IMG/VR virus record: IMGVR_UViG_3300010403_000705 | Location: 124,001-188,000 of that record | Direction: 5' to 3' (one strand) | Length of the DNA: 64,000 bases | Shown here: piece after piece, positions 2,446 to 17,915 of the stretch | Layout of the letters: every line of letters starts with the position of its first letter | Numbering within the stretch: the first letter of the stretch is position 1 | Notes under the pieces: generated by a model | Told to the model about the DNA's origin: nothing | Databases searched by the model: none | The model's input: only the letters and a program-made list of their open reading frames with translations | Program-made: the position numbers and the translations under genes

Positions 2446-2558
2446 ATTGGTAATAATATCATATACGGATAGGACCATACTATATTTTAGTAAATTGTAG
2501 TAATAATTCCCTATAATAATTGATACTTATTGTGATTCTCTCAAATGGAGAGTATATA

Positions 2559-2720
2559 ATGTTTATAAAACATGGTGATGGAAAAATAATGACTGTTATT
2601 GACGAAGAAGAATTAACTGATAAACAAAAAAAAGCAGTTGATGATTTATCTAAAAAATTAGTAAAACAATCTTATAATGATCGGGCTGATTCTTCAACAG
2701 AGAAGAATTCAGGGAGATAA
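2559..2720 (+). CDS. small hypothetical protein (53 aa)
   Basis: GGAG SD at 2547-2550 then ATG 2559 (MFIKHGDGKIM...), in frame with the track ORF. Confidence 0.65.
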   Translation: MFIKHGDGKIMTVIDEEELTDKQKKAVDDLSKKLVKQSYNDRADSSTEKNSGR

Positions 2721-15977: not shown

Positions 15978-16004
15978 GTGCCGAATTGTAAATTTATACG
16001 GCAT
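15978..16004 (+). promoter_or_regulatory. GC-rich hairpin in the leader of the decoration gene
   Basis: gtgccg (15978-83) pairs with cggcat (15999-16004), about 22 nt before ATG 16027. Confidence 0.45.
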
Positions 16005-16026: not shown

Positions 16027-16725
16027 ATGGCTTTAAAATTATTACAACCAGGCGTACAACCTTTAGGTCAGTATGATGGTCTCGATACAGAATTTTTAAC
16101 ATTAAAAGGTGGAGAAATTGTTAGTTTCACTTCAGTTCCTGTTTCTGGATCTGATAAAGCGGCTAGAGACGTACTTGATGGATATGTAAATCCAGGTTCT
16201 GTTCAAAAAAGAGTAGCAGTAACCAGAAACGTTCCCACTACAAAAAGACCTCTTATGTTATCTGATGATGGTATTACTGGATATGGAACTTTATTTGGTT
16301 CCATAATTGGTGGTAGTTTAGGTGGACAAGTAGTTGGAGTTACTATAGGACCACACACTTCTTTAGGTTCAGGTAAAGTAACATTATGGGAAAAACCTGG
16401 TATCTATGCTGTATCTTTAGATGCATGTGATACATCATCTACTGATGGATTACAGCCTACTAATACAACTTTAGATACAGGAGCGGCATTAACTTGGGTT
16501 CCAGCTAGTACTTCTGGGGGTCGGCTAACTCCAGTTGGTAGTGCAGCGGCTGCTGGTAACACAGTGGTTGTGGGTCGCTTTATTGATTTTGAAAGTAATG
16601 GTTCTCTTGTTACTACTCCAAGTAGTTTAGTAGCGGCACTTAATGCACCAGATGGCACATTAGGGGGAGCACTTCCAAAACAATTTGCTTTTGCTACTTT
16701 CTATTTTAATCCTCCATCTGCTTAA
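16027..16725 (+). CDS. capsid decoration/cement-like protein, paralog 2
   Basis: 232 aa, Gly/Thr/Val-rich, immediately upstream of the major capsid gene (position of lambda gpD-type genes). Confidence 0.7.
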   Translation: MALKLLQPGVQPLGQYDGLDTEFLTLKGGEIVSFTSVPVSGSDKAARDVLDGYVNPGSVQKRVAVTRNVPTTKRPLMLSDDGITGYGTLFGSIIGGSLGGQVVGVTIGPHTSLGSGKVTLWEKPGIYAVSLDACDTSSTDGLQPTNTTLDTGAALTWVPASTSGGRLTPVGSAAAAGNTVVVGRFIDFESNGSLVTTPSSLVAALNAPDGTLGGALPKQFAFATFYFNPPSA

Positions 16726-16737
16726 TTAATTTATATT

Positions 16738-16822
16738 CTAGCCGAGGGGCTGGAATAATTCTCTTCGGGGAAACCCCTCAACTTTTAATAATGTTTAGCT
16801 GGTAAAACTGGCAAAAATTCCA
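16738..16822 (+). ncRNA. candidate structured cis-regulatory RNA in the capsid gene leader
   Basis: GC-rich island with gagggg/cccctc stem, cUUCGg hairpin, alternative GGG-GAAA-CCC hairpin and further stems with G-U pairs, ending just before the AGGAG SD. Confidence 0.55.
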
Positions 16823-16839
16823 TTTAGGAGAAAATTTAT

Positions 16840-17853
16840 ATGAATATGTTCAATAATCAAAACACAATGAACGCCTCCTCTTTAAAAGATATGTTGCAAC
16901 AACTAGTAAAATATGCAGCAGTTTTAGAAGAGAATCAACCAGCCAATATGGGTCTAGCTGGTCAAGTTTCATTAAGTGATGATAAAAGAGATGAGTTAAT
17001 TTCACGTGCTATTGTTACTCAAGATGGTAAAATTGCTTTAGCACAAGCTATGGCAAATCCAATTAGAAGAAACTTAGATTATCATGGTATTGCACGACGT
17101 GCACTTGTTGTAGATCCTTTACCTCAAGCAGCTACACCAAGTTACGATAGAGATATTGATGTCGCAGCTGTTGTTATTTCATCCAATGGTACTGGACCAG
17201 AATCTAGGGTGTTTGGTGATAGAGTAGTTGTTCCTACATTTGAAATATATGCAAATCCTACTGTTAGAATTTCTGAAGTAAGACGTCGTAGATTTAATGT
17301 TATTGATAGAGCTGTACAAAAAGCCCGTCAAGAAATTATGGCTCAAGAAGATGCAAATATCTTTGCAGCTATGGATGCCGCTGCTTCAGTAGAAAATACT
17401 TTAACTGATATTGCAGATGCAGGTCTTCTAAAAAGAGATCTTGTAGAAATAAAACAACAAATTGATCGTTGGGATTTAGTAACCACTAAATATTTTATGA
17501 ATATCAATGAATTCACTGATATGCTAAAATGGGGTTCCGGTGGTGGTCAAGGTGTTGGCGGTGGAGATTTTGATCCTGTGACTATGAGAGAAGTATTACA
17601 AACTGGTTTATATGCTCATATTTGGGGTACAGATATTATGGTAAGTAAAATTGTACCACCAGGCACAATTTATGGAGCAGCAGATCCTGAATTCGTGGGA
17701 GTAATGCCAATTAGACAAGATATCGAAGTTCTTCCTGCAGACGAACCAAAACAACTAAAACTTGGTTGGGTAGTTTCAGAAGAAATTGGAATCGGAATTG
17801 TAAATCCAAGAGGCGTCGCTGCCGGTAGAAAGAGTGTTGTTCTAGGCGCTTAA
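16840..17853 (+). CDS. major capsid protein (HK97-like fold)
   Basis: 337 aa; strong SD; downstream of protease/scaffold and decoration genes, followed by a terminator; LVVDPLPQ E-loop-like segment and terminal GWVVSEEIGIGIVNPRGV strand typical of HK97-fold capsids. Confidence 0.88.
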   Translation: MNMFNNQNTMNASSLKDMLQQLVKYAAVLEENQPANMGLAGQVSLSDDKRDELISRAIVTQDGKIALAQAMANPIRRNLDYHGIARRALVVDPLPQAATPSYDRDIDVAAVVISSNGTGPESRVFGDRVVVPTFEIYANPTVRISEVRRRRFNVIDRAVQKARQEIMAQEDANIFAAMDAAASVENTLTDIADAGLLKRDLVEIKQQIDRWDLVTTKYFMNINEFTDMLKWGSGGGQGVGGGDFDPVTMREVLQTGLYAHIWGTDIMVSKIVPPGTIYGAADPEFVGVMPIRQDIEVLPADEPKQLKLGWVVSEEIGIGIVNPRGVAAGRKSVVLGA

Positions 17854-17886: not shown

Positions 17887-17915
17887 AAAAGGCATATTTT
17901 TATATGCCTTTTTTT
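17887..17915 (+). terminator. Rho-independent terminator after capsid gene
   Basis: aaaa-ggcatat-tttt-atatgcc-ttttttt. Confidence 0.9.

What the first reader, a model, noticed from the sequence alone, without database searches (positions are those of the whole stretch)
16738..16822. GC-rich, potentially switchable or pseudoknotted RNA directly upstream of the capsid SD
Seen: in a ~30% GC genome this 85-nt intergenic stretch supports two mutually exclusive folds. Fold A: GAGGGG(16744-49)/CCCCUC(16774-79) enclosing UUCUC-UUCG-GGGAA (cUUCGg tetraloop), leaving CUGGAAUAA unpaired. Fold B: CUAGCC-GAGG-GGCUGG (16738-53) plus GGG-GAAA-CCC (16767-76, GNRA loop). A third hairpin GCUGGU-AAA-ACUGGC (16798-812) has two G-U pairs. 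UGGAAU (16751-56) can pair with AUUCCA (16817-22) next to the AGGAG SD, making a pseudoknot in fold A. Inference: a cis-regulatory RNA (translational autoregulation, stabiliser or processing site) setting capsid/decoration stoichiometry. I do not recognise it as a known family.
Basis: partly seen in the sequence, partly recalled or inferred. Interest (0 to 1): 0.72.

Follow-up and report, generated by a model that had tools for sequence, protein, structure and literature searches.

The report
Conserved pseudoknotted capsid-gene mRNA leader
The spacer before the major capsid gene of this ~430-kb soil phage encodes a real, evolutionarily conserved RNA structure, a pseudoknot plus a hairpin shared by all relatives, that is in no RNA family database and most likely shapes how the capsid message is cut, stabilised or translated.

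Summary
Comparison with 60+ homologous capsid-gene leaders from IMG/VR sorts them.

Supported by compensatory changes:
- the long-range helix GAGGGG/CCCCUC (S2, 100% paired, 5 of 6 pairs covary)
- the inner UUCG hairpin (P4)
- the core of the CUAG/CUGG hairpin (S1)
- the hairpin GCUGGU-AAA-ACUGGC (P5)

Not supported:
- the GGG-GAAA-CCC hairpin
- the proposed UGGAAU/AUUCCA pseudoknot

S1 and S2 cross, so "fold A" and "fold B" are largely two stems of one H-type pseudoknot. Only two G residues are contested between them.

P5 and its 3' flank AAAUAAUUC occur in all 59 distinct leaders. They are single-copy in five 430-480-kb genomes and strand-specific (conserved tandem G·U).

The pseudoknot is one of three interchangeable upstream modules. 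The others are a terminator plus promoter-like box, or a long hairpin. The modules are scattered over the capsid-gene tree.

There is no Rfam membership; the best hit, freshwater-2, is sub-threshold and was shown to be unrelated.

My best reading is an intercistronic boundary, stability or processing module plus a recognised 5'-proximal hairpin for the capsid mRNA. The structure is solid. The mechanism is inferred, because no transcript-end data exist. This is a new member of a known kind, of moderate interest.

The parts
16027..16725 (+). Upstream gene (232 aa), a probable capsid decoration/cement protein. Its stop codon TAA is at 16723-25.
   Evidence: ORF listed. No PHROG or Pfam match. Conserved in relatives at 44-79% aa identity. 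AF2 model pLDDT 73. The top five VIA-align matches are all phage capsid decoration proteins (Z 6.3-9.8; four at Z 8.0-9.8), although Foldseek E >= 0.59. No detectable similarity to phage G gp26.
16736..16741 (+). S1 5' strand (UUCUAG). In this window it extends to 16734.
   Evidence: Pairs with 16750-55. Compensatory changes in relatives (A3 columns 4-8 with 17-21; outer pair A2 columns 29-48).
16742..16743 (+). L1 (CC), a two-base loop crossing S2. Alternatively pairs with G16748-49 in the extended hairpin.
   Evidence: C is 90% or more conserved at the second position. The 9-16 and 10-15 pairs are possible in most sequences but broken where S2 has A-U.
16744..16749 (+). S2 5' strand (GAGGGG), lying inside the S1 loop.
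   Evidence: Pairs with 16774-79. 100% paired in 30 sequences, with 5 of 6 pairs changed on both sides.
16750..16755 (+). S1 3' strand (CUGGAA). Extends to 16757 in this window.
   Evidence: Immediately follows the S2 5' strand (L2 = 0), giving H-type topology.
16759..16772 (+). P4 hairpin UUCUC-UUCG-GGGAA, lying within loop 3 of the pseudoknot.
   Evidence: A3 columns 59-62 with 69-72: 89% paired, 3 covarying pairs. This window's row is offset by one column in the alignment. The extra hairpin P3 of most relatives is absent here.
16774..16779 (+). S2 3' strand (CCCCUC).
   Evidence: The covariance model R2 finds this module once per genome, and only in pseudoknot-type genomes.
16780..16797 (+). 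A/U-rich unstructured linker (AACUUUUAAUAAUGUUUA). Relatives keep the motif YCUUUUAA(C)GUAAG here.
   Evidence: The 26 nt before P5 have no stable fold (0 to -2.0 kcal/mol, none at -4 or below) in 24 of 24 pseudoknot-type leaders, whereas 32 of 36 other leaders have a stable hairpin there. Two T columns are invariant.
16798..16812 (+). P5 hairpin GCUGGU-AAA-ACUGGC with a tandem U·G/G·U.
   Evidence: Present in all 59 distinct leaders: 98.3% paired, with compensatory changes at 3 of 6 pairs. Still a hairpin in a relative with a 77%-identical capsid protein. Model R1 finds one significant hit per genome in five genomes. Unique in the phage's own genome by regex.
16813..16822 (+). Conserved 3' flank ('tail') AAAAAUUCCA; family consensus AAAUAAUUC(C).
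   Evidence: Invariant or nearly invariant A, A, U, C columns in A1. No covarying partner established.
16826..16842 (+). Shine-Dalgarno AGGAG (16826-30) and the start codon ATG (16840-42) of the major capsid gene.
   Evidence: The GGAG columns are conserved.
16840..17853 (+). Major capsid protein gene (337 aa).
   Evidence: phrog_2522 at 8e-76. 53% identical to Bacillus phage G gp27. 346 relatives in IMG/VR.
17887..17912 (.). Canonical bidirectional intrinsic terminator after the capsid gene; it ends the transcription unit.
   Evidence: 11-bp stem flanked by an A-run and a T-run.

Best explanation
The spacer is a modular, structured stretch of the + strand mRNA.

Shown:
1. An H-type pseudoknot is made of S1 (16736-41 / 16750-55) and S2 (16744-49 / 16774-79). 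The UUCG hairpin P4 sits in its third loop.
2. An 18-nt unstructured A/U-rich linker follows.
3. Hairpin P5 (16798-812) and a conserved flank lie 13 nt before the Shine-Dalgarno sequence. They occur in every relative and only at the capsid gene.
4. The pseudoknot sits where close relatives instead carry a canonical terminator plus a promoter-like box, or a plain long hairpin.

Inferred:
- The decoration-like gene and the capsid gene are co-transcribed here.
- The pseudoknot is a compact structure that marks and protects the 3' side of the upstream cistron's RNA. It may also act as a roadblock to exonucleases or a weak stop for polymerase.
- The A/U-rich linker is where the RNA is cut, or where a new 5' end arises.
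- P5 becomes the 5'-proximal hairpin of the capsid message. There it stabilises that message and, because its stem sequence and flank are conserved beyond what pairing needs, is probably recognised by a protein or the ribosome that sets the very high capsid-protein output.

My confidence that the structure is real and conserved is about 0.9. My confidence in this mechanism is about 0.35-0.4.
For: - Covariation supports S1, S2, P3 and P4. 94.9% of cells are paired, 13 pairs change on both sides, 0 of 500 shuffles reach the observed score, and slid controls are paired in 60% of cells or fewer.
- RNAalifold independently recovers S1, P4 and P5.
- P5 is universal and covarying, with conserved G·U pairs that would be C·A mismatches on the other strand.
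- Both modules are single-copy and locus-specific.
- Architecture is dichotomous. 24 of 24 pseudoknot leaders have an unstructured linker before P5. 32 of 36 others have a sequence-variable hairpin abutting P5.
- Many of those others show a canonical terminator followed by a conserved GGTAATAAT box.
- Leader types are scattered on the capsid-gene tree, with at least 9 forced changes for the pseudoknot type. The modules are therefore functionally interchangeable.
- Homing-endonuclease insertions at the same site leave the box, hairpin and P5 unit intact.
- Relatives of both genes are present in soil and peat metatranscriptomes at similar depth.
- Three ~2-kb contigs of pseudoknot type span exactly the two genes.
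- Phage G, which has a 25-nt spacer, lacks the element.
Against: - There are no transcript 5' or 3' end data. No RNA contig aligns over 16681-16822.
- A pseudoknot with conserved loop residues (CC in L1, A-rich joints) is more elaborate than an exonuclease block requires.
- Nested-fold predictions do not show a more accessible ribosome-binding site than shuffled leaders do.
- No factor that recognises P5 was identified.
- Promoter-like -10 matches lie inside the spacer (TTTATA-18-AATAAT at 16730-59; TAATAAT at 16786-92). The capsid message could therefore start downstream of the pseudoknot.
- The host, and hence its RNases, is unknown. The only genome-collection hits are in MAGs of unrelated taxa.
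Confidence: 0.38

Rival explanations
1. P5 and its flank, with or without the pseudoknot, form a translational operator. A phage protein (the capsid protein itself, the decoration protein or a dedicated RNA-binding regulator) binds it to repress or activate capsid translation. This would resemble the T4 gene 32 and regA circuits or the coat-protein operators of RNA phages.
For: The P5 stem sequence, its tandem G·U and the 3' flank are conserved far more than the adjacent hairpin, whose sequence drifts freely. The element is unique to the capsid gene. It lies 13 nt upstream of the Shine-Dalgarno sequence.
Against: No binding protein is known or predicted. The P5 loop is not conserved (3-9 nt). 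The hairpin does not include the Shine-Dalgarno sequence or the start codon. No covariation links the upstream elements to the Shine-Dalgarno flank (p = 0.23-0.75).
Confidence: 0.2
2. The pseudoknot is a leaky intrinsic terminator or attenuator between the two genes. S2 closes a branched hairpin followed by a U-run, lowering capsid-gene read-through or defining the 3' end of the upstream transcript.
For: The conserved YCUUUU run lies 3-4 nt after the S2 3' strand. The consensus scan flags the S1 hairpin 16734-57 as terminator-like. Relatives have a genuine terminator at this position.
Against: The U-run is short (3-4 U) and separated from the stem. The stem closes a 24-60-nt branched loop. Genuine terminators of this phage look quite different: perfect stems flanked by long A and T runs (17887-912). 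Termination here would starve the most abundant virion protein unless a promoter follows, and none is convincing.
Confidence: 0.12
3. The element is a conformational switch (ligand-, protein-, Mg2+- or temperature-responsive). It toggles between the extended 10-bp hairpin 16734-57 (S2 open) and the pseudoknot, changing capsid expression.
For: G16748-49 can pair with either C16742-43 or C16774-75. Nested alternatives score -24.4 (extended hairpin plus small hairpins) and -18.0 kcal/mol (S2+P4+P5), and the pseudoknot is not scorable. L1 and joint residues are conserved, as in small pseudoknot riboswitches.
Against: There is no match to any pseudoknot riboswitch family, even at E <= 10. The module is dispensable in sister phages. 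The two contested pairs fail in the sequences where S2 carries A-U. No covariation supports an anti-Shine-Dalgarno pairing.
Confidence: 0.08
4. The conservation is at the DNA level: a promoter, an operator, a sigma-54-like or Chi-like site, or a homing-endonuclease target.
For: Promoter-like hexamers overlap the region. CTGGCA-N-TTC loosely resembles a sigma-54 -24/-12 element, and GCTGGT resembles 6 of 8 bases of E. coli Chi (both from memory). Homing endonucleases insert nearby.
Against: Conserved G·U pairs and compensatory changes (GCUAA/UUGGC, GCCGAUAU/AUAUCGGC, GAGUGG/CCACUC and others) preserve pairing on the + strand only. The sigma-54 spacing and the GC dinucleotide are not met. A start site 12 nt after the TTC would remove the Shine-Dalgarno sequence.
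Confidence: 0.04

Closest known systems
T4 gene 32 mRNA leader pseudoknot (autogenous translational control)
   Same: It is an H-type pseudoknot at the 5' side of a phage mRNA leader. An unstructured A/U-rich stretch follows, running towards the ribosome-binding site.
   Different: The regulated gene here is a capsid protein, not a single-strand-binding protein. A further conserved hairpin (P5) lies between the pseudoknot and the ribosome-binding site. There is no sequence similarity. The pseudoknot is replaceable by a terminator in sister phages.
T7 gene 10 (capsid) leader, and 5'-stabiliser hairpins of bacterial and phage mRNAs (ompA, aprE, SP82 RNase III sites). This comparison comes from my own knowledge.
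   Same: A stable hairpin close to the 5' end, plus an A/U-rich enhancer-like tract before a strong Shine-Dalgarno sequence, on the most highly expressed late gene.
   Different: The 5' end has not been mapped here. The P5 sequence is conserved, which suggests recognition, whereas generic stabilisers need only structure.
Rfam freshwater-2 RNA (RF02980), a candidate cis-regulatory phage leader
   Same: Overall layout: a promoter-like box, two or three small hairpins, a pyrimidine-rich tail, a Shine-Dalgarno sequence and ATG. It is abundant in uncultured phage contigs.
   Different: The score is 21.9 bits against a gathering score of 49.9, and relatives give no hit. Genuine instances have a different conserved sequence and precede 117-319-aa proteins unrelated to this capsid protein.
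Candidate structured RNAs upstream of phage structural genes (PMC10690425, 10,006 motifs including five upstream of a capsid family)
   Same: The same kind of object: a covariation-supported motif directly upstream of a phage capsid gene in metagenomic viral contigs.
   Different: Whether this motif is among them could not be checked, because no supplementary files are held. The capsid family named there (PHA00201) is a different annotation.
Intercistronic processing and stability elements of polycistronic mRNAs (T7 RNase III sites, B. subtilis cggR-gapA, E. coli papBA). This comparison comes from my own knowledge.
   Same: A structured element, an A/U-rich single strand and a second structured element lie between two co-transcribed genes that need defined relative output.
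   Different: Cleavage has not been shown. The upstream element is a pseudoknot rather than a long duplex.

Membership tests
Rfam freshwater-2 (RF02980) | Covariance-model score at or above the curated gathering score (49.9 bits) | tested here: not met
   21.9 bits, E = 0.16 in a 181-nt search. No hit at gathering threshold in 20 relatives, nor at E <= 1 in 8 relatives.
Rfam freshwater-2 (RF02980) | Conserved core GUAGYGGC-UAGAAC-...-AUCGGACUUCU before AAGGAGAAAACAAAUG, and the same downstream gene family | tested here: not met
   Genuine instances were fetched from IMG/VR. Their core differs from GCUGG..CUGGCAAAUAAUUC. Their downstream ORFs (117-319 aa) give no BLASTP match to the capsid protein.
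H-type RNA pseudoknot (structural class) | Two helices in which the loop of the first pairs with sequence 3' of it, each helix supported independently | tested here: met
   S1 (93% paired; covarying pairs) and S2 (100% paired; 5 of 6 covarying pairs) cross.
H-type RNA pseudoknot (structural class) | Both helices form at the same time, with loop lengths that span the grooves | not testable with these tools
   L1 = 2 nt over a 6-bp S2, L2 = 0, and L3 is at least 16 nt including a hairpin. These lengths are geometrically plausible by comparison with known pseudoknots (inference). No probing or 3-D modelling was done.
Known pseudoknot riboswitches (preQ1-I/II/III, SAM-II/V, guanidine-III, fluoride) | A match to the family covariance model | tested here: not met
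   None was listed even at E <= 10 on the 181-nt region.
Intrinsic (Rho-independent) terminator | A G+C-rich hairpin immediately followed by a run of U | tested here: inconclusive
   The scan flags 16734-57 followed by AUUCUCUU in this window only. Across the family, S2 is followed after 3-4 nt by only 3-4 U. This is unlike the phage's clear terminator at 17887-912.
5'-terminal mRNA stabiliser hairpin | A hairpin within a few nucleotides of the transcript's 5' end | not testable with these tools
   No transcription start or processing site is known. RNA contigs do not cover the leader.
T4 gene 32-type autoregulatory leader | The regulated product is a nucleic-acid-binding protein that binds its own leader next to the pseudoknot | not tested
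   The product is a capsid protein. No binding test was possible.
Sigma-54 promoter | TGGCAC-N5-TTGC, with GG and GC 10 nt apart and a start site about 12 nt downstream | tested here: not met
   The consensus here is CTGGCAAATAATTCC. It has no GC dinucleotide, the spacing is off by one, and the predicted start site would remove the Shine-Dalgarno sequence.

The most novel reading that the evidence does not exclude
The pseudoknot is a sensor: a small riboswitch-like or protein-responsive fold. It toggles between the extended hairpin and the S1 x S2 pseudoknot. In this way it couples capsid-protein output, or the decoration-to-capsid ratio, to a cellular or assembly signal in ~450-kb megaphages. 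P5 would be the docking site of a so far unknown phage RNA-binding regulator.
Probability: 0.08. Interest if true: 0.8.

Novelty: new member of a known kind. Interest (0 to 1): 0.5.

Why it matters
Phages with ~450-kb genomes build very large capsids and need thousands of capsid subunits per particle. How they secure that output is unknown, because almost none are cultured.

This leader offers:
- a covariation-supported pseudoknot of about 45-90 nt, small enough for structure work;
- a universally conserved hairpin with a tandem G·U that looks like a recognition site;
- a natural experiment in which three different upstream modules have been swapped repeatedly at one intergenic site.

It can serve as a marker for this clade's capsid locus in metagenomes. 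It is also a concrete test case for post-transcriptional control of late genes in megaphages.

Tried and rejected
- **Rfam membership.** There were no gathering hits in the window or in 20 relatives. The sub-threshold freshwater-2 lead was followed to genuine instances and rejected.
Rejected by pair counts.
Rejected by pair counts and a permutation test.
- **Anti-Shine-Dalgarno sequestration by S1, P4 or the neighbouring hairpin.** Duplex energies of true pairs are no better than permuted pairs (p = 0.23-0.75).
- **A partner for the conserved tail.** Signals were weak (p = 0.007 and 0.02) but had no consistent partner, so this is left open.
- **'Insulator keeps the ribosome-binding site open'.** Shine-Dalgarno accessibility is not above shuffles.
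- **General late-promoter motif.** GTAAGT, GGTAATAAT and TGAATAA gave no consistent genome-wide signal.
- **Read-through or frameshift stimulator for the upstream gene.** There is an in-frame stop at 16756-58, spacer lengths are not a multiple of three, and the pseudoknot is absent in sister phages.
- **tRNA or tmRNA-like element.** None found.
- **Extra copies elsewhere in the genome.** None found.
- **Transcript ends from public RNA runs.** Only diverged relatives' contigs were found, and none lies over the leader.
- **Host identification through genome collections.** Only mis-binned MAG contigs were found.
- **Homology of the upstream protein to phage G gp26.** None by BLASTP or hhalign.
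- **A wider pattern scan for the pseudoknot core.** It mostly hit GC-rich coding DNA and added one new leader.
- **Checking the 2023 catalogue of phage structured RNAs.** No supplementary files are held.

Full report
**Context.** The window is bases 124,001-188,000 of a 432,844-bp IMG/VR virus record, at about 30% GC. The finding lies in the 114-nt spacer (16726-16839) between a 232-aa ORF (16027-16725) and a 337-aa ORF (16840-17853). The downstream ORF is the major capsid protein: phrog_2522 at E = 8e-76, and 53% identical to gp27 of Bacillus phage G. Phage G itself has only a 25-nt spacer after its decoration gene and nothing resembling this leader.

The upstream protein has no PHROG or Pfam match. 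An AlphaFold model built from 42 homologues (pLDDT 73) aligns best to capsid stabilising or decoration proteins of phages BB1, TW1, Pam3 and T1 (Z 8.0-9.8, covering most of each chain). Foldseek E-values are not significant. 'Decoration gene then capsid gene' is therefore plausible but only moderately supported.

**Observation.** The 42 nt at 16738-79 are 57% GC. The 117-nt spacer folds to -29.9 kcal/mol, z = -2.45 against dinucleotide shuffles.

**Relatives.** A back-translated scan of IMG/VR found 346 contigs encoding a relative of the capsid protein. The best 80, at 87-95% aa identity, were fetched. They gave 60 distinct 150-nt leaders. Two further pattern scans added seven pseudoknot-type leaders. 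A genome-collection scan added a relative with a 77%-identical capsid protein.

**The universal part.** The third hairpin, P5 (window 16798-16812), with the flank AAAUAAUUC, aligns in all 59 distinct sequences.
- Its six pairs are formed in 98.3% of cells.
- Three pairs show changes on both sides, for example G-C to A-U and U-A to C-G. Whole-stem replacements such as GCCGAUAU/AUAUCGGC also occur.
- Slid controls are paired in at most 62% of cells.
- The tandem U·G/G·U is kept in most sequences (58 and 44 of 59). On the complementary strand these would be C·A mismatches, so the selected object is the + strand RNA.
- The loop is free to vary (3-9 nt).
- In the 77% relative the hairpin persists with Watson-Crick pairs and the flank AGUAAUUC.
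- A covariance model of this part finds exactly one significant match, at the capsid leader, in each of five 430-480-kb genomes (E = 1e-7 to 2e-11; next-best hits at E >= 0.17). A regular-expression scan of the phage's own genome agrees.

**The GC-rich part.** Pair counts give:

| Helix | Window coordinates | Cells paired | Covarying pairs |
|---|---|---|---|
| S2 | 16744-49 / 16774-79 | 100% | 5 of 6 |
| S1 | 16737-41 / 16750-54 | 93% | 2 |
| P4 | 16759-72 | 89% | 3 |
| P3 | absent in this window | 95% | 3 |

- S2 pair types include GAGGGG/CCCCUC, GAGUGG/CCACUC, GAGAGG/CCUCUC, GGGAGG/CCUCCC, GAGGGA/UCCCUC and AAGGGG/CCCCUU.
- S1 has a further covarying outer pair in the RNAalifold output.
- Overall 94.9% of cells are paired and 80 cells change on both sides. 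None of 500 shuffles reaches the observed covariation score, and slid controls give 59% or less.
- The 5' strand of S2 lies inside the S1 loop, so S1 and S2 cross. This is an H-type pseudoknot with L1 = CC and no L2. The third loop carries P4, and P3 as well in most relatives.

- The GGG-GAAA-CCC hairpin is paired in 38.8% of cells.
- The two innermost pairs of the fold-B hairpin (C16742-43 with G16748-49) are possible in most sequences. They fail where S2 carries A-U at that position, so S2 has priority.
Across the family it reduces to purine-rich against pyrimidine-rich complementarity without compensatory change (75.7% pairable, one-sided changes only; permutation p = 0.56).

A covariance model of the nested part (S2, P3, P4) hits once in each of the three pseudoknot-type genomes. 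It does not hit in two genomes with other leader types.

**Modularity.** Among the 60 leaders, the region upstream of P5 takes three forms:
- 24 are pseudoknot type.
- 21 have a conserved GGTAATAAT box, and many of these show a canonical terminator directly after the upstream gene.
- 11 have a long perfect hairpin with a conserved loop.
- 4 are other.

In 32 of 36 non-pseudoknot leaders, a stable hairpin of freely varying sequence ends 0-5 nt before P5 (mean z = -3.4). In all 24 pseudoknot leaders the 26 nt before P5 have no stable fold and keep the motif YCUUUUAA(C)GUAAG.

On a maximum-likelihood tree of the capsid gene the types are interspersed. The pseudoknot type needs 14 changes by parsimony, and at least 9 are forced by well-supported branches. 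Sister phages therefore use different modules.

In several relatives, 0.8-1.4 kb carrying a minus-strand GIY-YIG or unknown ORF is inserted at the same site, leaving the box, hairpin and P5 unit next to the capsid gene.

**Known families.**
- Rfam gives no gathering-level hit in the window or in 20 relatives.
- The best sub-threshold hit is freshwater-2 (21.9 against 49.9 bits). I retrieved genuine freshwater-2 instances from IMG/VR. They share only a general layout, have a different conserved core, and precede unrelated 117-319-aa proteins. Membership is rejected.
- No pseudoknot riboswitch family appears even at E <= 10.
- A 2023 survey reports 10,006 candidate structured RNAs in viral contigs, five of them upstream of a capsid family (PMC10690425). 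Whether this motif is among them could not be checked.

**Mechanism.** No RNA evidence resolves transcript ends.
- Only one DNA run holds the sequence.
- Metatranscriptome contigs of relatives cover both genes at comparable depth, but none aligns across 16681-16822.
- Tests for anti-Shine-Dalgarno pairing were negative.
- Tests for a covarying partner of the tail were inconclusive.
- Tests for enhanced accessibility of the ribosome-binding site were negative.

The best-supported inference comes from the architecture. A pseudoknot, a terminator plus promoter-like box, and a long hairpin are interchangeable at one position. All of them lie upstream of an invariant hairpin and flank that exist only at the capsid gene. 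I therefore read the pseudoknot as a boundary and stability element for the upstream cistron. I read the A/U-rich linker as the place where a new 5' end arises, by cleavage or initiation. I read P5 with its flank as the 5'-proximal hairpin of the capsid message, probably recognised by a protein or the ribosome.

The rival readings, in order of my confidence, are:
- a protein-bound translational operator
- a leaky terminator
- a conformational sensor
- a DNA-level site

The last is contradicted by the strand-specific covariation. The others cannot be excluded.

**Verdict.** Its anatomy needs correcting:
- The two 'alternative folds' are mostly one pseudoknot.
- The least-emphasised third hairpin is the universal core.

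It is a new, uncurated RNA motif of a known kind (a structured phage mRNA leader). Its function is inferred, not shown.

Noticed in passing
L056:2121-2864 (-), L021:1698-2849 (-), L047:781-1944 (-); also L009, L024, L035, L065, L069, L075: In about a dozen relatives, 0.8-1.4 kb is inserted between the decoration-like gene and the capsid gene. One insert encodes a GIY-YIG endonuclease (PF01541, 1.7e-11). Two encode 383-387-aa proteins with no Pfam match. This intergenic site looks like a hot spot for homing-endonuclease-type insertions.
   Followed up: partly
Own genome G000:C1:248000-350000 (outside the window): About 100 kb has 35-50% GC, against 29-32% elsewhere. The intergenic 8-mers T[CA]CCCATC are about 10-fold enriched upstream of genes; many of the copies seen lie in this GC-richer part. 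This may be a distinct genome module with its own promoter or regulatory motif, or a chimeric assembly.
   Followed up: no
It is preceded by [CG]ATAAATAC, which resembles the T4 late-promoter box, and followed by 117-319-aa ORFs. L110 carries two copies. It looks like a late-gene leader of uncultured freshwater phages.
   Followed up: partly
window 15978-16004: The leader of the decoration-like gene has its own hairpin (GUGCCG...CGGCAU) about 25 nt before its ribosome-binding site. A hairpin of different sequence sits at the same position in L012, L034 and L037.
   Followed up: no
L012, L034, L037 (whole contigs of about 2.0 kb): Three independent contigs start 60-140 nt upstream of the decoration-like gene and end at the capsid gene's stop codon. 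They span exactly the two genes. This would fit transcript-derived assemblies of a bicistronic unit, but their origin could not be checked.
   Followed up: no
window 16840-16975: The capsid protein has about 40 N-terminal residues with no counterpart in phage G gp27; the alignment starts at residue 45 against residue 4. This may be a propeptide or an annotation difference.
   Followed up: no
window 2449-2560: A GGTAATAAT-ATCATAT box and a second AGTAATAAT box precede a gene start (GGAGAG...ATG). They resemble the box found upstream of the capsid leader in 'promoter-type' relatives and may be the same promoter class.
   Followed up: no
window 17887-17912: A perfect 11-bp hairpin flanked by an A-run and a T-run lies directly after the capsid gene. 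It is a bidirectional intrinsic terminator and shows what genuine terminators look like in this phage.
   Followed up: partly
L245:186-2911: In a MAG contig labelled Chitinophagales, only residues 94-247 of the capsid protein match, and the region is split into several ORFs. The capsid gene there may be interrupted or degraded.
   Followed up: no
Long-hairpin leaders such as L015, L017, L025, L029, L044, L049 (about 45-70 nt upstream of P5): The loop of the long hairpin is conserved in sequence (GGAUUGAGUUU) while its stem varies. It is partly complementary to the conserved tail AAUUCC(AC), which hints at a loop-tail contact that I could not establish.
   Followed up: partly
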